A DNA stretch of 64,000 bases from Anthoceros angustus (Eukaryota; Plantae; Anthocerotophyta), in NCBI GenBank assembly GCA_010909165.1, contig MU008195.1:434001-498000 (forward strand), read 5' to 3'. Positions 295-20,731 of this stretch are shown here, piece after piece. Each line of letters opens with the position of its first letter. Positions within the stretch are counted from its first letter, which is position 1. The notes below the pieces were generated by a model. It was not told where the DNA came from, searched no databases, and saw only the letters and a list, made by a program, of their open reading frames with translations. Position numbers and translations under genes: made by a program.

Positions 295-957
295 CTACGC
301 ACGACAAGACGGTAGTGTCAACCCGCCACAGAAGAAGGAAACGATGATGTACACCAAGACGATGATGAGGCAAGTCAATGAAGCCAGCAGCTTAGTATTC
401 TGCAACCACAGCGACTGCCGAAGACGACGGGACTGCTTCTGAAACCTAAAACTGTTGTCCTGTATCGTAGCAGTTTTGTCTACCAGTAGCTCGATTCTGT
501 CCCCTCGTTCCAAAACCTTGTCAATATTCTCCACCATCACCTTGTGCACCTCGGCCATCTCTCCCTTCACCCTGGTGATGGTGTCGGCATTGGGGTTATT
601 CGAATAGTACTCCATCTGCTGGTTCAAACTCCTGGAAAACTCATCGTTCATGGCATACGGCAGCGCAGTGGAAGCCACTCTCCCATACGCCTTCATAAAT
701 CTGCCATGAATGTCCTCCAGAAACGCGAACGGAATCCTCCTCCCCATGGTTTCGTCCGCCATACACAGGAAAGCCAGCCCGTCTGCCTTCATGATGTGGA
801 AAATATGGCGGTCCTGGGAGTAGGAAGCCCGCGTCTCCGGGACCGCTGGCACCCTCTCCAAAATACGCCGCGCAATGGTCCCCGCGTTGCTGGAAGCAGC
901 GGTGAACTCAGCCAGCACCAAGGTGCCTCTGGCTACCAGCGCGTACAAAATCGCCAT
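295..957 (-). CDS. VAMP714: VAMP7-family longin R-SNARE (VAMP714-like), intronless, 220 aa
   Basis: Starts at the ATG at 957 (MAILYALVARGTLVLAEF). It has a longin domain (SYSQDRHIFHIMKADGLAFLCMAD...AMNDEFSR), a SNARE motif (VMVENIDKVLERGDRIELLVDKT) and a C-terminal TM followed by CGGLTLPSCRA. This closely matches Arabidopsis VAMP714 as recalled. Confidence 0.95.
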   Translation of the reverse strand: MAILYALVARGTLVLAEFTAASSNAGTIARRILERVPAVPETRASYSQDRHIFHIMKADGLAFLCMADETMGRRIPFAFLEDIHGRFMKAYGRVASTALPYAMNDEFSRSLNQQMEYYSNNPNADTITRVKGEMAEVHKVMVENIDKVLERGDRIELLVDKTATIQDNSFRFQKQSRRLRQSLWLQNTKLLASLTCLIIVLVYIIVSFFCGGLTLPSCRA

Positions 958-1328
958 GGCTCCCTTTCCCCCGAGGCCGAGTCGCCAGTCAGATCGTGAG
1001 CGCGGGCGCAATCCAGAGCACAAATCCGCTCCCAATTCAAACCTCGACCTTCACGATCCGGCTGCAGACAAGCGCGCCTGTGCCTGGGCCTTCGCGCTCA
1101 GATCTCCATCCGTCCCGCCGCGCCCGCCTCGCTATTACCCCTCGGGAGAAAAGAGCCAAGTCTGTAACGCAGTCTACTAATATATAGTGTAACATAAAAG
1201 TGCTTTAGATAGCGTGCTAAACGCGAAACGCTAAACTGGATCCAACATGGCCAGTTGATGAACTTGGCACAAGCCTCTGGCCAGGCTCCAATTCCAGCGT
1301 CACACCATCGAGATCCAGCAAGCAGGCC

Positions 1329-4443: not shown

Positions 4444-7400
4444 ATGGCCTTGTCAACAGGCGGTGATGGAGGCAGAAGGCGCCCAACAAAGATCCAGATT
4501 GAGAAGGTGGTTCCCAGATGGATTCCCATGGAACCACCCAGGCCCTTGCCGTTGGACCTTGCAAGTCTCCAACACAGGGTTTCAGTAGGACAGGATTTAT
4601 TTCCGCCACCTTCTGAAAGCTCTGCAGACTCTTTCGAGGAAGCCAGTACTTTAGATGATCCTGCCCAAATTGAAGGAGGGTTCCGCCCACCCCAACAGTT
4701 TCAAGCAGCTGCTGCAGCCACACAGACTGAAAACACTCCCTTCCAAGTAGGGTTCCGCCCACCCCAACAGTTTCAAGCTGCTGCTGCAGCCACACAGACT
4801 GAAAACTCTCCCTTCCAAGTAGGGTTCCGCCCACCCCAACAGTTTCCAGGAGCTGCTGGAATCAATCAGTCAGCAACCTCTCCCTTCCAACCAGGGTTCC
4901 GCCCTACCCGACAAGTTCAAGCAGTTACTGGTACCAATCTGTCTGCAAACTCGCCCTTCCAAGGAGGGTTCCGGCCACTCCAGCAATTTCAACCAGCTGC
5001 TGGAATTAATCAATCTGCACCCTCCCCCTCCCAGCCAGGATTCCGCCCTTTCCAACAATTTCAAGCAGTTGGTGGAATCGATCAGTCTGCAAGCTCTCCC
5101 TTCCAACAAGGGTTCCGCCCTTCCCAAGTATACCAGCCACCAGCTGCAGCTGTAAATCCTTCATCGCAGCAAGGATTCCGCCCTCCTCAACTTGCTGCTT
5201 CATTTCAAAGAGGCCATAGCACTGACCATGCTTCCATCAGTTTCTCAACAGCTTCCTTTCGACCATCCCAAACAGGTTCACCAAGAGGTTCTTCACTTGC
5301 TCCTGCTTCACCTGGCCTTGCCTCGCAGGAGACCGACAATGCTCCCATCAATTTCTCAACAGCTTCCTTTCGACCAGCCCAAACAGGTTCACCAAGAGGT
5401 TCTTCACTTGCTCCTGCTTCACCTGGCCTTGCTTCGCAGGGTAGTGACCATGCTCCCATCAGTTTCTCAACAGCTTCCTTTCGACTATCCCAAACAGGTT
5501 CACCAAGAGGTTCTTCACTTGCTCCTGCCTCACCTGGCCTTGCCTCGCAGAGTACTGACCATGCCATCAGTCCTTCTTCCCCTTCTTTCCGACCATCCCA
5601 AACAGGTTCACCAAGAGGTTCTTCACTTGCTCCTGCTTCACCTGGCCTTGCCTCGCGTGGTGCTGACCATGGTCCCATCAGTTTCTCAACAGCTTCCTTT
5701 CGACCTTCCCAAACAGGTTCACCAAGAGGTTCTTCACTTGCTCCTGCTTCACCTGGCCTTGCCTCGCAGAGTACTGACCATGCTTCCATCAGTCCTTCTT
5801 CCCCTTCTTTCCGACCATCCCAAACAGTTCCACCAAGAGCTTCGTCACTTGCTCCTGCATCACGTGACCATGATACGAACGGCACCAGTACTCCACGAGC
5901 TTTTGTTCCTGAGAAAGCCTTTCAACTCGCTCCCGCTATTTCCTCTCAAGATTTTGTTGCTGGCGTGCCTTCTCCGACACAATCTGATTCCCGGCAAGGC
6001 TCCCCAACTCTTGATTTCCATGGCTTTGACAAGCCCATCCCAAAGATGCAGCATTTCCCAAGACAAAGTGTGAAACAGATACGTTTGTTCCCAAGTAATG
6101 TGGGTGATGGTTCGCCATTGTGGTCACCTGGAGATGAGGTGGGAGATGCTCCTTTGGATGGAGCTTCCTCCATGGCCCGACCTGACTTCGAGAATATGGG
6201 CTACTTGGGAGCAGATCAAAGCGGGCTGCATTTTTCAGGACAAAGTCCGAGTCACTCAAGTTTGCTCTCAAGTAGAGTGGGTGGTCGTTTCCCATCATGG
6301 TCACCAGGTGGTAAACTGGGTGATGCTCCTTTGGATGAAGCCTTATCTATGGACCAACCTGACTCCAAGACGATGGGATACTTAGGAACGGAGGCAAGCG
6401 GGCTGCATTTAAGTCCGAGACAGTCAAGTTTGCTCCCAAGTAATGTGGGTGGTAGTCTGCTATCGTGGTCACCTAGAGGTGAGGTGGGAGATGTTCCTAT
6501 CTCGGACCCTATGGCAGAAACCAGCAATCTTTGGCCGCTTGGCCAGCAACTGCTAAGTACATCAGAGGTTGGCAAGTTGCGAGCGGAGGAAGACAAAGAA
6601 AGCATCAATGACGAACCCCCCATTACTTATGATAGGCAATTATCTGATCCATATGCCGTGAAGGATCTGAGGAGATGGAGGCCTACAAATTACGCAGACT
6701 ATCCTGAACTGCAGAGGATACAAGGCAAGCTTTCGGAGCAATCTTTGGACAAACTCCGCATAAAGGCATGGATGTGCATTCAACGTCAGCTGAAAGAACA
6801 TACCTTTTCTGTAGATCATGCGCTGAGTAATAGTCTTCTGCTAGTCACATTGCTCTTAGCATCCTGCTGCTGGCTTTATATCTTCAAGTTCTCTAGGTGG
6901 TCATGATGGATTCTGGTTTCATCCTCAGGCATTGGTTCCTATCCAGAAAGCCAAAGAAAGGATTCAGATTCTTCAGAGCCATCAGAAGAAGGAGGAGGAT
7001 GAGGGAAAGAAAGAAGTAGAAACAGGTGACATTATCTCTCGTCTGAATCGCTGGTTCCAGCGTGTGTGGCAACGCTCTCGAGATACGATAGGGGTCTATA
7101 CTTGACTCCTCCGAGCTTGGTGGGTTGTTATTTGCACATATGCTACTTAAATGTGTGTTGTCTAAAGCTGAAAAAATTCCCTCAGGCAACCCACGACAGA
7201 TCTGGTCTTTGGCTGGAGCATTTGCGAATAATCGAAGGCCACTTTGGTTCAGCAATTATGCTGACTTTCGAATTCTTGCGATGGGTTTTTCTTCTAAATT
7301 GCCTCCTCGCCTTATTGTGGCTTGTGCTTATAATCATCCCATTTTGGGTGGCACCTCCTCGCATTTTCAGCTGGAGTATTTTTAGACGCGCAGGAATTCT

Positions 7401-10400
7401 GGGTATACTTCAGGTGTGTATATAGTGTTTTAGATTTGTTGTAGTGTTCATGCAAGAAAGGAGGATGGAATTTATGCACCATGGAGACATGTTTTCTGTG
7501 TGGTCCTATTCACAGTGTTTCTCCTCCTCCCCTTTTCTTTTTTCTTGGGCTCGTTGCAACTGACATGGCATACTTGAGAAGAGTTTATTTTCAATGCCTA
7601 CATATTGCTCATAGGTAGTTATAATGAAGTAAAACTATTTGCTCACCTTTTATTTTTCTCTCTCCTAGACTAATGGGGTAGATCTTACATTCCTTCTCTA
7701 TGGTGGCTACTCTTACGGAGATGAGCAAAAGGATTGGTATCGTGTTGGTTGGATGTATCCACTTGCAGTGTTCTCCACATTCATGACCAGTCTAGTGGCT
7801 GTTTCATATAGGTATCTTTGCTGCTATTGCTAGTCTTGCTTTTGGACGAAGCTAGTTGTCGGCTGCCGATATTTTGAATTAGAAACAAAGCAAGGGAATT
7901 AAGACACTTTGTTCATATTTTGCAGGATGGTGAGAAATATGCAAATGGGTTCTTTCGAAAGTGCTTACAAAACGACCAGTGGTTATGCATTTGCAACTAT
8001 TTCCTTTACTTCATGGGATTTTCACATAACATCTCATGATGTACTACTACTTTACCTATTTTTTTTATCGATCCTAATAAATGATTGAAGGAAATAATCC
8101 TGTGCACGGTGTTTGTGGCTTCAATTCTTTATTGTTCTATCTTGATATGTGATGAACAGACAGCAACAATCCTTCGACGTGGGATACGAATGGAAATGCG
8201 TCAACTATTGTCCGATCTTGTGAACCCTCCAGCTGATGTTGTGCACACCATCTTAAAGACTCGTAAGGTATGCGTTATGTCACCAATTATGTGTTCTCCA
8301 ACAAGTTGTGATCGATTGCACACTGAAGACTTAGTAACAATGTGTATTGTAGAGATTCTTGGCGGTCTTATTGTTCTGGCCCATTGTTCTCGGCACCACC
8401 ATCAGTGTAACAATTGTCCTTGCATTGAAGGATGCTGAAGTCAATAGAAAACTAGGTGATGTGTATTTTGTTCGTGTTTGTTGATTTTTTTTTCCTTTTG
8501 AGAAGACCTATTCTTATATTTCCATAACCTTTTGGATTTTCGTTCTTGATATTTTGGTGTTTGTGTAGGTTCTGACTTAGCACAATCAGTCATTCTTAGT
8601 ATAGTTCATATACTTGGATCATTGTTAACAAAATATCTCGTAAAAATTTCGGAATGGAAACCGCGGATGGCAGAGCATGTTTTAGTATGGAAATTATTTG
8701 CATTGCGAGTAGGATTTATGTCAGCTCTATTTTTTAGGTATCATCAACATCCAAGCTTATATAATATATAAAATAATTTACTTCCACAATTGATAATTAC
8801 ATTCTTTGCTAGAATACATAGGCTCTTCATTGATGAACATCTAAATTCTGTCTTAAAATAAACAGGCTTTATAAGTTAATCATGGATGCTCATCTTCGTT
8901 ATTCCGGAGAACTAGCTTATGATAATTGCGAGATGGAAACTCAATGTGCCATCAATGGTTATGTTTGTTGTTCTGATTCGAATACTACATTATTATGGCC
9001 AACAGATGCAACACAATTGACATCAACTTTGACAACACACTATTGTAATACAAGTCAGGTTTATATACACAACTTAGATAAAAAAAATCTTTTAATCACA
9101 CCATTGTTCATCATTTTTTGTGATTGATATCAACTTTGACAACACACTATTGTAATACGAGTCAGGTTTATATACACAACTTAGATTAAAAAAATCTTTT
9201 AATCACAGCATTGTTCATCATTTTTAAGAGTGACTCGTGTTTTTCAAGAGAATCATCGTTTCTAGATAATGTTGAATATACCCATAAGGCTTAGATAGCT
9301 TTTTTGCCAAGGCCTTCATTTCACTTTTGGCCTATGTGGTGCTGTTTTGGCTCAAAGCCTTTGAACTATTTTTTCGGCTAATGCCGTAAATTAAACTATC
9401 TCTGCATTATTATTTTTAAAACAATTGCTGATCAACCAATATAATATTTCTTTGGGTCTTGTATTCAGGTAGGGGCATGCATACCATCATGTATGGAGAA
9501 TGCACTAGGCAAGCAGTTGCTAAGATTATTATTAACGAATACGCTTATCCAAAATGCAATGGGAATATTAATGGGGTTTTTCACAATTTATTTTTTTAAA
9601 GTAAATATTTGAAAGTATTTATTATTATTATCAGTCTTTTTATATTATTACTTATAGTTACTCTAATACATGTGTTTCATGTTTAAGAGGAAGAGAGCCA
9701 TGGATATAGAAGATCTTGCTATACGAGTCGTGTATAATCAAGCACTCATTTGGGTGGGATCATGCTTCTCCCCAGCAGCCCCCTTTTTGGGGCTCATATG
9801 TATAGCTTTCACATTTTATTGTGAAAAGGTAATTTCCTAGTAATTCAAGTACCTTCATGTAAAGATATAAATCAATTTTAGGATAACAATCACTGTGAAC
9901 ACGTACTTATATGCTACAAATGAAGTGCTAAAATTGTCTTTCTGGTAGATGACAATGTTACAAACTTGTGATCCTTCGGGAAGGAAATATAGTGTATCAC
10001 GAACTTCTAATGTCACTTATGGTCTTCTGACGGTCGCCTTACTCTTATGCACAATTCCCATGTCTTCATTTCTTGGTAATCCGACTGAAGCTTGTGGCCC
10101 TGTTCCTGGTAAATCAATGTTCGGCTCGATTGTTGGGTACATAGAGGTAAACAATTAGAAACTCTAGAATAGTTGTTTTACATAATCACAAAATCATTGT
10201 TGTGAACTGAACATGCAATTTTTTAATTTGTATTGCAGAATGCACCACAACAATTATGGTTTATATTACGCTGGATAGGAAGTCCCATAGTATGGGGTAG
10301 TTTATTTTGTTTTTCCATTGTGCTCTACTTTGTGCAGCGTAAAAGCCTTCACCAAGCTGCACAAAGTCTATGGGTAACCCAAAGAGAGCTTGATGCACAT

Positions 10401-10956
10401 CGCCTAGATCAACAACCACCACAGGCAAGTATGAATTTGCTACCAAAAATATTTAACCTTTCTATCGAGTAGATTATGTCTATTGATAACTTTCTTCTTA
10501 TAGCAGAACGAGATAGTCCAAGATGGAACAAAGAAGAATGAGACAACTGCGCCAACGGATTTAGATCCACTTCTCTCACAGCCTGATGGTTCCATCAAAG
10601 ATGATGAAAATGCAATAAATTCTCAGGATCCAACAATAGTTACTGACCCTATTCTTCCTCAACAAAATAGTTTCATGAAAATTGATGACTCTTTGACAAA
10701 TGATCATGATCCAAATATAGTTAGTAGCTCATTTCTTTCACAACATGATAGTTTCATCAAAGTTGATACAAACTCAACAAATAATCGTGATCCAAATGTA
10801 TTCACTAACCCAATTCTTTCAAACCATACTAGCTTAATAGTACCCATTCCAAATATTTTCGCTAATCCAATTCTTTCACAACATAATAGCATGATAGTAG
10901 CTAATTCCAATTTGTTTAATGGGCATGACCCCGAATCTATGCATCCAGAACCATGA
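4444..10956 (+). CDS. TMC: Transmembrane channel-like (TMC) protein, ~14 exons, with a long repetitive N-terminal extension
   Basis: Approximate exons: 4444-6826, 6897-~7093, ~7199-7413, 7669-7811, 7926-8040, 8160-8267, 8353-8455, 8569-8737, 8866-9058, 9469-9600, 9688-9828, 9949-10146, 10239-10424, 10504-10956. TMC hallmarks appear in the correct order: LWLEHLRIIEGHFGSAIMLTFEFLRWVFLLN, FLLYGGY, SFTSWDFHI, CMENALGKQLLRLLLTN (TMC domain CWETxxGQE-like), VYNQALIWVGSCFSPAAP...FYCEK, CDPSGRKYSVS, and ACGP. The exon 2/3 junction is uncertain. Confidence 0.88.
4666..5200 (+). repeat. Coding tandem repeat, ~72 bp / 24 aa (GFRPPQQFQAAAAATQTENSPFQV-like), about 7 copies
   Basis: Recurrent gggttccgccc...tttcaagc units in TMC exon 1. 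Confidence 0.9.
5210..5870 (+). repeat. Coding tandem repeat, ~114-117 bp / 38-39 aa (ASFRPSQTGSPRGSSLAPASPGLASQSTDHAPISFST), about 5-6 copies
   Basis: Recurrent ccaagaggttcttcacttgctcctgcttcacctggccttgcctcgcag units. Confidence 0.9.
6080..6500 (+). repeat. Coding repeat of ~56-58 aa (PSNVG...WSPGxEVGDAPLD...MGYLG...SGLH), about 2.5 copies
   Basis: Visible in the ORF 4444 translation. Confidence 0.8.
9018..9226. repeat. 107-bp tandem duplication that copies the end of a TMC exon and its splice donor
   Basis: The unit tcaactttgacaacacactattgtaatac(a/g)agtcag|gtttatatacacaacttagat... occurs twice, with GT donors at 9059 and 9166. Confidence 0.9.
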
Positions 10957-11541
10957 GTGTGAATTGTTTCAATTATCAAATTTTCTTTCTTGTCTATCAT
11001 TTCACACATACTCAGCTCTTTCATTTTTAGGTTTATCTAATAAAAAGACAGGTGCAATAGTCCACACTTACTTAACTCATTATTTTTTAGTTTACCATAG
11101 AAAAGGAAGATGCAATTTTGAAGAAACTCTTGTTATTATTATGAAATCTAGAAATATTTATTTGCAATTATAAATTACACTATGAATTCTATATTATCAT
11201 AACCAGGGATTCATTGTGAAACGGATAACACATAAATCAAGACGCGGTATGTGGTTCCTGAAACTTGGGACTTGATGGTCCCGACTTTAGATGGAAAAAG
11301 TGGACACTGGTGGTCTTTTGCACTTGGCGGTCCAGTTACATACAACTAGCTTTTAGCTGCCCTACAACTCACCACTAAAAACTTAACATTGAACTTAAGA
11401 GTAAGCCAATAACTCCCTCAACATCAACAACTCTCTTCTGTATTTATACTTGACTGTAAGACATATAATGCCATATGATCCAATTCCACTCTGAAATATA
11501 TGGCCTAAAACTCCCCAACCGGAGTGAAACGTGCTCTAGAC

Positions 11542-19450: not shown

Positions 19451-20731
19451 CTACCAGGCTACCATAAAAACCCAAAGGCAAATGCACAACATACTGGAAA
19501 GAAATGATCCCTTTATCAACTTTTGCGCATGGTTGTGATCTGTAGGTTCTATTGGTTGAGACCAATCAGGAGGTTGAGACCAATCGGGAGGTTGAGCAGG
19601 AAGTGGTGCTGCGAAGGTTGAACAGCTCAAATTGTATTTTGGGTAACCTAACACATTAGCCAACCCCCAATACTGCTCGAATCCACCTGGTTGTGTGGAC
19701 TTCATGTCTTCGTCTAGTAGTCCAAATATAAAGGCTTCTATAGGTTGGTTTGGTCTTAATGGAGTACCTATGTCATTATTAAGGTAATCGCACAAACCTT
19801 GATTGAATCGTTTTGCATTAGTTACATTGGCAGTAGAGTCGTAACCATCTGTCGGCCATCCTATCTCACCCACAATTATTTTCATATCTCCACATGCTAC
19901 GTTTGTTAATGCACCTACAAACATATCATAAGTTGCTGCAAAGTCATTGGTGTAGTTATAACTATTTATATAATTGCCATCAAAAAAAGCAAAAGGGATA
20001 GGAAAGTTATCACTATAAGTAGTATCAAGGAATGGATATATATCTACAGTAAACACTCCATCAATTGAGTATAGGAACTGAACAATGTCCGTCATCAATG
20101 TTGTATAGTTTGCATTGAAAGTTGCATTTGACGGTGGTCCATCAAATTTTGATATAATATCTCCGTTGAATGGAATAGTAACAGTGACTACATTATCAAG
20201 ATGACATTGTACTAAAGCATGATAAATATTTTCCGTTGCTGGCAGCAATACGTCTGCATATTTATCATTATAAGCACCTAGTAACGGTTTGTTGCCAACA
20301 CCAACTAATCTGCAAAATATATTGAATTTAGTAAAAAAAATTAGATTCTATATTTACAAATAAAAATATAAGTTAATAAAAAATACTTACGAGATATTTG
20401 CTCCTCGTAAACGGTAATGTAAAATATAATTTTCAACCCAATTCAAAGCAAAATCATTACTTGTAGCAAGATATTGCAAATCGTCATTACTACACTGAAT
20501 CATCACTTCAAGATCCGGATTCTTCGTAAATTCGTGTAATATTGTTTCATTTGGCCCATAAAGCTTCACTTTATCGAATCCATATGATTTTATGAGTTCA
20601 ATGCCGTCACTTGGATCGAGAACATAAGTTGACAATGACCCCCAATTGACTCCAATTCCTTGGACTTGAGAGATAGTTGAGAGTAGAATGATAGTCGGGA
20701 CCAACAAAAGGAGAAATCTAAGAGAGTACAT
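19451..20731 (-). CDS. GH17 beta-1,3-glucanase-like protein 1, 2 exons, with a GPI/TM tail and acid/base Glu replaced by Lys
   Basis: Exons 20731-20391 and 20309-19451 (phase-2 intron GTAAGT..TGCAG). It has a signal peptide, GIGVNWG, FDKVKLY, VGVGNKP, VTIPFNGDI, IIVGEIGWPTDG, FIFGLLDEDMK and YWGL, then a Pro-rich linker and a hydrophobic C-terminus. There is no X8 domain. Confidence 0.93.

What the first reader, a model, noticed from the sequence alone, without database searches (positions are those of the whole stretch)
4444..10956. TMC mechanosensory-channel homolog in a land plant
The sequence shows a complete multi-exon gene carrying the ordered TMC motifs. TMC1/2 are the pore-forming subunits of the animal hair-cell mechanotransduction channel, and to my knowledge Arabidopsis and other angiosperms lack TMCs. 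A plant TMC would be a largely uncharacterised channel system distinct from OSCA, MSL and Piezo. One hypothesis is that it is retained in plants with flagellated sperm.
Basis: partly seen in the sequence, partly recalled or inferred. Interest (0 to 1): 0.8.

Follow-up and report, generated by a model that had tools for sequence, protein, structure and literature searches.

The report
Plant TMC channel gene, already-known kind
This land plant, probably a hornwort, has an intact, transcribed gene of the TMC family, whose animal members form the hearing channel; such genes were already reported in mosses, liverworts and spikemosses, and their job in plants is untested.

Summary
Window 4444-10956 (+) carries a 14-exon gene with an uninterrupted 1557-codon reading frame. 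Its core is a TMC protein: it passes the Pfam TMC domain cut-off, its only solved-structure matches are C. elegans TMC-1 and TMC-2, and it scores 410 bits against a lycophyte TMC. It keeps 26 of 28 columns conserved across plant, algal and holozoan TMCs. Spliced RNA-type contigs confirm five introns in the same species and a sixth in a sister species. In a tree the protein sits inside the green-plant TMC clade. It lies outside liverworts, mosses, lycophytes and ferns, so the lineage is probably a hornwort, inferred by exclusion.

The novelty claim does not hold. Single-copy TMC genes in Coccomyxa, Klebsormidium, Marchantia, Physcomitrella and Selaginella were published in 2019-2022, and databases already label fern, moss and liverwort proteins "TMC domain-containing".

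Two things are modestly new. This gene also has about 770 residues of disordered N-terminal extension built from three tandem repeat families.

Function in plants remains untested. The scan's only other TMC note (s1-268040) is on this same stretch, not on other DNA.

The parts
4444..6765 (+). Exon 1 (774 codons). It holds the start codon, a lineage-conserved N-terminal 51 aa, the S/P/A/G/Q-rich repeat extension and the conserved pre-TM1 lead-in.
   Evidence: The frame is open from the ATG at 4444. The N-terminal 51 aa are 39% identical to the start of the equivalent long exon in L001, and residues 699 onward are homologous too. Plant TMCs align from residue ~756. X1 contigs cover 5627-7093, and organism B contigs join the end of this exon (the tool's joint 6763|6927, equivalent to the GC-AG intron 6766-6928) to exon 2.
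4673..5127 (+). Repeat family 1 inside exon 1. The unit is 72 nt (24 aa), 'GFRPxQQFQ...'; the protein has 8 GFRP motifs.
   Evidence: Tandem Repeats Finder gives period 72, 6.3 copies, 80% matches.
5221..5863 (+). Repeat family 2 inside exon 1. The unit is 111 nt (37 aa), 'SFRPSQTGSPRGSSLAPASPGLASQ...', about 6 copies.
   Evidence: Tandem Repeats Finder gives period 111, 5.8 copies, 85% matches.
6083..6410 (+). Repeat family 3 inside exon 1. The unit is 177 nt (59 aa), '...SWSPGxxxGDAPLD...', 2-3 copies.
   Evidence: Tandem Repeats Finder gives period 177, 1.9 copies. A third, degenerate copy shows as a motif at residue 674.
6929..7093 (+). Exon 2 (55 codons), a charged cytosolic segment before TM1.
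   Evidence: Intron 1 (6766-6928, GC-AG) is spliced out in organism B contigs. X1 and X6 contigs end exactly at 7093. It lies within a single HSP to plant TMCs.
7168..7413 (+). Exon 3 (82 codons): the 'WLEHLRIIEGHFGS' motif and TM1.
   Evidence: The only solved-structure hits are C. elegans TMC-2 and TMC-1, at E 3e-6 and 6e-6. It found 194 library hits, the named ones all TMCs. The donor at 7414 is confirmed by a spliced contig. Intron 2 (7094-7167) is inferred from frame, GT-AG ends and homology.
7669..7811 (+). Exon 4: the extracellular loop with 'LYGGYSY' and TM2.
   Evidence: Both flanking joints are seen in spliced contigs.
7926..8040 (+). Exon 5: the 'SWDFHITS' motif.
   Evidence: Joints 7809|7924 and 8040|8160 are seen. 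S988, W989 and D990 are conserved across TMCs.
8160..8267 (+). Exon 6: the cytosolic loop 'LRRGIRMEMRQLLSD'.
   Evidence: Joints are seen.
8353..8455 (+). Exon 7: TM3.
   Evidence: Joints 8265|8351 and 8452|8566 are seen. The hydrophobic segment is 1038-1056.
8569..8737 (+). Exon 8: TM4 and TM5.
   Evidence: The acceptor is confirmed in organism B contigs. It is 65% identical to L001. The donor at 8738 is inferred; organism B contigs run on into the intron.
8866..9058 (+). Exon 9: the Cys-rich extracellular loop between TM5 and TM6.
   Evidence: This is the only acceptor/donor pair that keeps the frame. It is homologous to L001 and to the fern Cys-rich loop. No read support.
9469..9600 (+). 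Exon 10: the first part of the Pfam TMC domain ('CMENALGKQLL', the plant form of CWETxVGQE) and TM6.
   Evidence: Pfam PF07810 profile 1-33, 16.9 bits.
9688..9828 (+). Exon 11: the second part of the Pfam TMC domain ('VYNQALIWVGSCFSP...FYCEK') and TM7.
   Evidence: Pfam PF07810 profile 51-94, 34.3 bits against a cut-off of 25. TMC-1 and TMC-2 align at 726-762 and 654-689.
9949..10146 (+). Exon 12: the 'YSVSRTSN' motif, TM8 and the 'CGP' motif.
   Evidence: It is 52% identical to L001. C1328, G1329 and P1330 are conserved.
10239..10424 (+). Exon 13: TM9-TM10 and the start of the cytosolic tail.
   Evidence: It is 64% identical to L001 and homologous to plant TMCs. The GC donor at 10425 (CAG|GCAAGT) is inferred.
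10504..10956 (+). Exon 14 (tentative): a 150-codon N/D/P/S-rich C-terminal tail with 27-aa and 19-aa tandem repeats, then the stop codon.
   Evidence: A 150-codon open frame sits in DNA of about 37% GC. The tandem repeat periods, 81 and 57 nt, are multiples of three. No read or homology support.
9016..9225 (+). A 107-nt tandem duplication spanning the end of exon 9 and its donor site. The second copy lies in intron 9 and carries a cryptic donor at 9166 that would break the frame.
   Evidence: Tandem Repeats Finder gives period 107, 2.0 copies, 96% matches.

Best explanation
This is the orthologue, in this land plant (probably a hornwort), of the TMC gene that non-seed green plants keep in one copy (two in ferns). 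Shown: it is intact, spliced and transcribed, and it encodes a 1557-aa membrane protein. The core of about 570 aa has the TMC sequence signature and about ten hydrophobic helices. Inferred from the family: the protein adopts the TMEM16/OSCA-like ten-helix fold and dimerises. Each subunit would offer a lipid-facing groove lined by TM4-TM7 that conducts cations, moves lipids, or both. Whether membrane tension or a tether opens it is unknown. The ~770-aa disordered N-terminal arm is S/P/A/G/Q-rich and holds three tandem repeat families. Together with the repeat-bearing C-terminal tail it is most likely a cytosolic regulatory or tethering appendage. The arm's position is conserved in a related species, but its repeats are not.
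For: Gene model: 14 exons and one open frame of 1557 codons. Transcription and splicing: GT..AG joints at five introns in contigs identical to the window, and at six introns in a sister species. Of 7 listed differences from the sister species in exon 1 (6576-6699), 5 fall on third codon positions (my count). Family: Pfam TMC above cut-off, with both parts of the domain in order. No Anoctamin or RSN1_7TM hit appears even at E<=10. The only solved-structure hits are C. elegans TMC-1 and TMC-2, at the matching positions. The spliced core scores 410 bits against Diphasiastrum TMC, 377 against Sphagnum and 325 against Selaginella EFJ05970. 26 of 28 columns conserved in at least 14 of 16 plant, algal and holozoan TMCs are kept. 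Trees place it inside the Viridiplantae TMC clade (100/100) and the streptophyte/land-plant clade (99/97). A second genomic contig from another species (L001) has the same exon structure at 48-66% identity in most core exons. It also has a homologous N-terminus ahead of a ~445-aa S/P-rich exon 1. The Atlas model of a fern orthologue superposes on the animal TMC7 cluster at TM 0.81. That is indirect support for the fold.
Against: No function of any plant TMC has been measured. Papers searched here only list presence. Exons 9-14 and intron 2 lack read support. An X1 contig of the same species runs unspliced across intron 1 (6515-7093), which would truncate the protein at 6904 if it were the main form. 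Two well-conserved positions differ (P to S at 1085 in TM4, E to S at 1095). The branch is long (1.03-1.32).
Confidence: 0.85

Rival explanations
1. The plant TMC is kept only where a wall-less flagellated cell (sperm or zoospore) exists, and it works in that cell, for example as a mechanosensory or Ca2+-entry channel of the spermatozoid.
For: Named plant and algal holders found here all have motile cells by general knowledge, Coccomyxa aside. They are Mesostigma, Myrmecia, liverworts (Marchantia paleacea, Riccia, Calypogeia), Sphagnum, lycophytes (Selaginella, Diphasiastrum) and ferns (Adiantum in 2 species, Ceratopteris with 2 genes). No seed plant appears among the named hits. In fungi, PMC7003098 reports TMC only in Rozella and Blastocladiomycota; both make zoospores (my knowledge). 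The fern genes contradict that paper's cell-wall/lignin account.
Against: Coccomyxa subellipsoidea (P0031) has no known flagellate stage, nor do Capsaspora and Fonticula, which the paper lists (organism biology from my knowledge). No Ginkgo protein appeared among the 30 hits I could name, although Ginkgo proteins are in the collection (one search shows a Gb_ entry). Cycads and Ginkgo have motile sperm, so the idea predicts a TMC there. The tissue of the RNA runs is unknown. Loss at the base of seed plants would also fit many other traits.
Confidence: 0.25
2. The published account (Erives & Fritzsch 2020). TMC is incompatible with rigid or lignified cell walls, so it was lost in the fern, gymnosperm and angiosperm crown group. 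The gene here would be a general plasma-membrane sensor of soft-walled tissues.
For: PMC7003098 gives the distribution in plants and fungi. The gene here is in a bryophyte-grade plant.
Against: Ferns have lignified walls yet carry TMC genes with the Pfam domain: Adiantum capillus-veneris, A. nelumboides and Ceratopteris richardii, the last with two paralogues. Lycophytes also lignify (my knowledge).
Confidence: 0.08
3. Not a working plant gene: a pseudogene, a mis-assembly that fuses a repeat-protein gene to a TMC fragment, or foreign (animal or protist) DNA.
For: One same-species contig keeps intron 1. Two of the 13 introns are GC-AG, which is unusual. Sister-species contigs over the exon 1 repeats are 10-50 times deeper than over the core, so the repeat units may also sit in other transcripts.
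Against: There is no stop in 1557 codons across 14 exons. Spliced transcripts occur in two species. The sister-species contig joins exon 1 to exon 2 in frame. L001 has the same architecture with a homologous N-terminus. The tree places the protein with plants, far from holozoans. The flanking genes are plant genes.
Confidence: 0.04
4. It is an OSCA/TMEM63 or anoctamin (TMEM16) family member rather than a TMC.
For: All three families share a fold and a Pfam clan.
Against: No Anoctamin or RSN1_7TM match appears at E<=10 in any exon. The only Pfam and solved-structure matches are TMC. Every named full-length relative carries PF07810.
Confidence: 0.01

Closest known systems
Single-copy Viridiplantae TMC (Selaginella EFJ05970, and the Marchantia, Physcomitrella, Klebsormidium and Coccomyxa genes of Erives & Fritzsch 2020; database 'TMC domain-containing proteins' of Sphagnum, Diphasiastrum, Adiantum, Ceratopteris, Riccia)
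   Same: Same family and same clade. The core is collinear from pre-TM1 to the post-TM10 helix at 31-39% identity. The Pfam TMC domain and the Cys-rich TM5-TM6 loop are shared.
   Different: The branch is long and sits outside all the named land-plant groups. It has by far the longest N-terminal extension: about 830 aa before TM1, against about 60-450 aa in the others. Three tandem repeat families and a repeat-bearing C-terminal tail have no counterpart in the others.
L001, an unnamed genomic contig (Logan SRR33208241) carrying the nearest TMC found
   Same: The exon boundaries are the same and most core exons are 48-66% identical. The first 51 aa are homologous, and a long S/P-rich exon 1 is present.
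   Different: Its exon 1 is about 445 aa and has no tandem repeats. The contig ends before the C-terminal tail.
Animal TMC1/TMC2 (hair-cell mechanotransduction channel) and C. elegans TMC-1/TMC-2 (PDB 7USW, 8TKP)
   Same: The pre-TM1 'IEGHFGS' motif, TM1 and the TMC domain align at matching positions. 26 of 28 pan-TMC conserved columns are kept.
   Different: The proteins are only distantly related: exon-level scores are 30 bits and 14 bits. The plant clade branches outside all holozoan paralogue groups. The partner proteins CIB/CALM-1 and TMIE, the tip-link coupling and mechanosensitivity were not examined, and they are unknown in plants.
OSCA/TMEM63 and anoctamin/TMEM16
   Same: The Pfam clan is the same (Anoctamin-like, CL0416) and the fold is expected to be the same ten-helix dimer (family knowledge).
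   Different: No sequence match to either family's Pfam models. The large TM2-TM3 cytosolic domain of OSCA is absent.

Membership tests
TMC (transmembrane channel-like, PF07810) | Pfam TMC domain above the gathering score | tested here: met
   The ORF 9670-9837 scores 36.2 bits against a cut-off of 25. Exon 10 covers profile 1-33 (16.9 bits) and exon 11 covers profile 51-94 (34.3 bits), adjacent after splicing.
TMC (transmembrane channel-like, PF07810) | Conserved pre-TM1 motif (W..IEGxFGS) followed by TM1, collinear with solved TMC structures | tested here: met
   Exon 3 aligns to C. elegans TMC-1 152-199 and TMC-2 166-216. These are the only solved-structure hits, at E 6e-6 and 3e-6.
TMC (transmembrane channel-like, PF07810) | Full-length collinear similarity to recognised TMC proteins | tested here: met
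   phmmer of the spliced core gives Diphasiastrum 410 bits, Sphagnum 377, Selaginella 325, Coccomyxa 244, Pigoraptor 146 and Ixodes TMC7 85. Single HSPs span residues ~760-1400.
TMC (transmembrane channel-like, PF07810) | Placement inside the TMC tree | tested here: met
   It falls inside the Viridiplantae clade (100/100) and the streptophyte/land-plant clade (100/99 and 99/97).
TMC (transmembrane channel-like, PF07810) | Ten transmembrane helices in the TMEM16-like fold | tested here: inconclusive
   A Kyte-Doolittle scan finds seven clear hydrophobic segments; reading the sequence suggests three weaker ones at the expected places (~937-957, ~1205-1230 and one between TM8 and the last). No 3D model could be made of the spliced protein. 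A fern orthologue's Atlas model matches animal TMC7 at TM 0.81.
TMC (transmembrane channel-like, PF07810) | Ion conduction, mechanosensitive gating or lipid scrambling | not testable with these tools
   This needs electrophysiology or reconstitution. No plant TMC has been assayed in the papers searched.
TMC1/2-type mechanotransduction complex | Auxiliary subunits (CIB2/CALM-1, TMIE, LHFPL5) and a tether | not tested
   I did not search the genome for partners. Only this window was available.
OSCA/TMEM63 (RSN1_7TM) and anoctamin (PF04547) | Match to the family's Pfam model | tested here: not met
   No hit to either model at E<=10 in any exon.

The most novel reading that the evidence does not exclude
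Plant TMC is a channel of the wall-less motile gamete. It would be retained in every land-plant lineage that still makes swimming sperm (hornworts here, liverworts, mosses, lycophytes, ferns) and lost with sperm motility in seed plants. The long repeat arm in this lineage would tether it to the sperm cytoskeleton. That would make it the plant counterpart of a ciliated-cell mechanosensor or Ca2+ channel, and it would overturn the published cell-wall explanation.
Probability: 0.2. Interest if true: 0.65.

Novelty: new member of a known kind. Interest (0 to 1): 0.3.

Why it matters
The gene itself is an ordinary orthologue of a family already recorded in non-seed plants. It matters in three limited ways. 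First, it adds what is probably the last major bryophyte lineage (hornworts) to the list of TMC holders. Second, the fern genes found on the way show that the published loss pattern and its cell-wall explanation are wrong. TMC loss now coincides with the seed-plant branch. That keeps the motile-sperm idea alive and testable in Ginkgo and cycads. Third, no plant TMC has ever been assayed, so Marchantia, Physcomitrium or Anthoceros knockouts would be the first functional data on the ancestral, pre-animal role of the hearing-channel family.

Tried and rejected
1. I did not build it, because there is no detectable sequence similarity to align and no OSCA or ANO sequences were fetched. Pfam scans at E<=10 served instead.

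2. Direct donor 8709 to acceptor 9469, skipping what I now call exon 9. It keeps the frame but cuts TM5 short and drops the ~45-65-aa Cys-rich loop that all plant TMCs have. I rejected it in favour of exon 8866-9058.

3. Donor GT at 10429 for the last intron. No acceptor fits the frame, so the GC donor at 10425 is preferred, tentatively.

4. Word searches for seed-plant TMCs. Only the 8000 candidates sharing most words were scored, and known plant TMCs were missed. The blank for seed plants is therefore weak evidence.

5. The N-terminal 60 aa against other plant TMCs gave no real match. The motif is shared only with L001.

6. The protein-atlas search failed twice as busy. The third try gave only animal TMC clusters and no plant taxon list.

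7. Read laying gave no coverage after 8770, so the 3' half is unsupported by reads.

8. Folding the spliced protein and complex prediction were not done.

9. The organism's name stayed coded (organism A).

Full report
**Observation**

The region 4444-10956 on the + strand starts with an 820-codon open frame, followed by a series of short open segments. One of these, 9670-9837, matches the Pfam TMC domain at 36.2 bits against a curated cut-off of 25.

**Transcript evidence**

One search for sequencing runs found contigs from the same organism (X1, identical sequence) and from a relative about 93-95% identical (X2, X6). I laid them on 5300-11200.
- They show precise GT..AG joints at 7411|7667, 7809|7924, 8040|8160 and 8265|8351 in X1 and the relative. 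The joint 8452|8566 is seen in the relative only.
- In the relative, the end of exon 1 is joined to exon 2. The tool places that joint at 6763|6927. It is ambiguous over 6 nt, and only the GC..AG reading, intron 6766-6928, is canonical.
- X1 and X6 contigs stop exactly at 7093, the donor I predict for intron 2.
- One X1 contig (6515-7093) runs unspliced through intron 1. That is intron retention or pre-mRNA.
- Nothing covers the gene after 8770.
- These precise intron removals mean the contigs come from RNA, although the runs are only guessed to be RNA.

**Gene model**

I combined the joints with tblastn of fetched plant TMCs and a scan for frame-keeping splice sites. This gave 14 exons and a 4674-nt CDS of 1557 codons with no internal stop. 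There are 11 GT-AG and 2 GC-AG introns of 74-410 nt.

Exon 9 (8866-9058) was not obvious. It encodes the Cys-rich loop between TM5 and TM6 that all plant TMCs carry, and it is the only acceptor/donor pair that keeps the frame. The last junction (10425/10503) and the 150-codon C-terminal exon are tentative. They rest on a long open frame in AT-rich DNA and on tandem repeats whose periods (81 and 57 nt) are multiples of three.

**Family**

- Exons 10 and 11 carry Pfam TMC profile positions 1-33 (16.9 bits) and 51-94 (34.3 bits). No exon matches Anoctamin or RSN1_7TM even at E<=10.
- Among solved structures, only C. elegans TMC-1 and TMC-2 match. Exon 3 aligns at their pre-TM1/TM1 region and exon 11 at their TMC domain.
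- An exhaustive HMMER search with exon 3 gave 194 hits. The named ones are TMCs of Mesostigma, Sphagnum, Selaginella (EFJ05970), Diphasiastrum, Adiantum, Myrmecia, Coccomyxa, choanoflagellates, a filasterean, an ichthyosporean, a beetle and a tick (TMC7).
- The spliced core scores 410 bits against the Diphasiastrum protein and 245-377 bits against other plant and algal TMCs.
- It keeps 26 of the 28 columns that are the same in at least 14 of 16 plant, algal and holozoan TMCs. These include W844, E852, G856, the SWD triplet, C1196, Q1250, W1254, G1256 and the CGP triplet.
- A hydropathy scan finds seven clear hydrophobic segments; from reading the sequence I place three weaker ones where TMC helices are expected.

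**Whose gene is it?**

- Trees put the protein inside the green-plant TMC clade (100/100) and the streptophyte/land-plant clade (100/99 and 99/97).
- It lies outside liverworts, mosses, lycophytes and both fern paralogue groups, on a long branch.
- It is only 31-39% identical to every named plant TMC.
- The upstream neighbour (295-1035, minus strand) is an intronless VAMP71-type longin SNARE. Its best named relatives are non-seed land plants at 74-78% identity.
- Hornworts are the one major land-plant lineage with no named TMC among the hits, so a hornwort is my inference by exclusion. It was not shown directly.

**A closer relative**

The top library hit led to an 11-kb genomic contig, L001. 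It carries a TMC gene with the same exon boundaries and 48-66% identity in most core exons (lower in three, 33-43%). Its first 51 residues are 39% identical to the window's, and they stand ahead of a ~445-aa S/P-rich exon 1. This has three consequences.
- It fixes the start codon at 4444.
- It shows that the N-terminal extension belongs to the gene.
- The three tandem repeat families of the window's exon 1 are a local expansion, because L001 lacks them. Those families are 24-aa units x8, 37-aa units x6 and 59-aa units x2-3.

The N-terminal motif is not found in other plant TMCs.

**What is known**

- Erives & Fritzsch (G3 2020, PMC7003098) reported a single Tmc gene in Coccomyxa, Klebsormidium, Marchantia, Physcomitrella and Selaginella. 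They implied its absence from ferns, gymnosperms and angiosperms, and they blamed rigid or lignified walls.
- A 2022 OSCA paper (PMC12806904) also lists TMC in Selaginella and Coccomyxa, and it places TMC, anoctamin and OSCA in one Pfam clan.
- Further paper searches found no functional study of any plant TMC and no link to antheridia or sperm.
- The existence of plant TMCs is therefore already known, and this gene is a new member.

**What is new on the side**

Ferns do have TMC. Adiantum capillus-veneris, A. nelumboides and Ceratopteris richardii carry it, in two paralogue groups. That contradicts the published loss pattern and its explanation.

The fungal holders named in the paper are zoosporic lineages (my knowledge).

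There are caveats.
- Coccomyxa, Capsaspora and Fonticula hold TMC but are not known to make flagella.
- I saw no Ginkgo TMC among the 30 hits I could name, although Ginkgo proteins are in the collection.
- My word searches were capped and not exhaustive.

I rate the sperm hypothesis at about 0.2-0.25.

**Mechanism**

Shown: the gene is intact, spliced and transcribed, and it carries the TMC sequence signature.

Inferred from the family: a ten-helix TMEM16-like dimer with a TM4-TM7 groove that passes cations, lipids or both. The long disordered N-terminal arm and the repeat tail would be cytosolic regulatory or tethering parts. An Atlas model of a fern orthologue superposes on animal TMC7 at TM 0.81. 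This supports the fold for the clade but not directly for this protein.

Gating, ion selectivity, partners and cell type are unknown.

**Verdict**

The gene is a new member of a known kind, of modest interest. The scan's only other TMC note (s1-268040) concerns the repeat extension on this same stretch.

Noticed in passing
window 295-1035 (-): An intronless 245-codon ORF encodes a VAMP71-type longin R-SNARE (Longin plus Synaptobrevin domains). Its best named relatives are non-seed land plants at 74-78% identity, and an unnamed Logan protein is 90% identical.
   Followed up: partly
window 9016-9225 (+): A 107-nt tandem duplication (96% identical) copies the last 43 nt of TMC exon 9 together with its donor site into intron 9. 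This creates a cryptic donor at 9166 that would shift the frame.
   Followed up: partly
window 5300-7100 (+): Sister-species contigs over the exon 1 repeats, and over 6838-7093, are 10-50 times deeper (250-1160) than those over the TMC core (13-40). They carry odd joints (5880|6229 with 17 inserted letters, a 'goes back 47' at 6998). The repeat units may also occur in abundant unrelated transcripts, or the repeat array differs in that species.
   Followed up: no
window 6766-6928 and 10425-10503 (+): Two of the gene's 13 introns have GC-AG ends. The first is backed by a spliced contig in the sister species. A same-species contig retains that intron.
   Followed up: partly
P0009, P0012, P0014, P0016, P0176, P0180 (ferns): Ferns carry TMC genes in two paralogue groups (Adiantum a/b, Ceratopteris 16G/25G). 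This contradicts the published statement that TMC stops at lycophytes.
   Followed up: partly
L001:6073-10923 (+): An unnamed Logan genomic contig (SRR33208241) holds the nearest TMC orthologue. It has the same exon structure and a ~445-aa non-repetitive S/P-rich first exon. Its organism is unknown.
   Followed up: partly
window 19451-20248 (-): This ORF carries the C-terminal two thirds of a glycoside hydrolase family 17 domain (119 bits). It is part of the GH17 pair that another note of the scan already flags.
   Followed up: no
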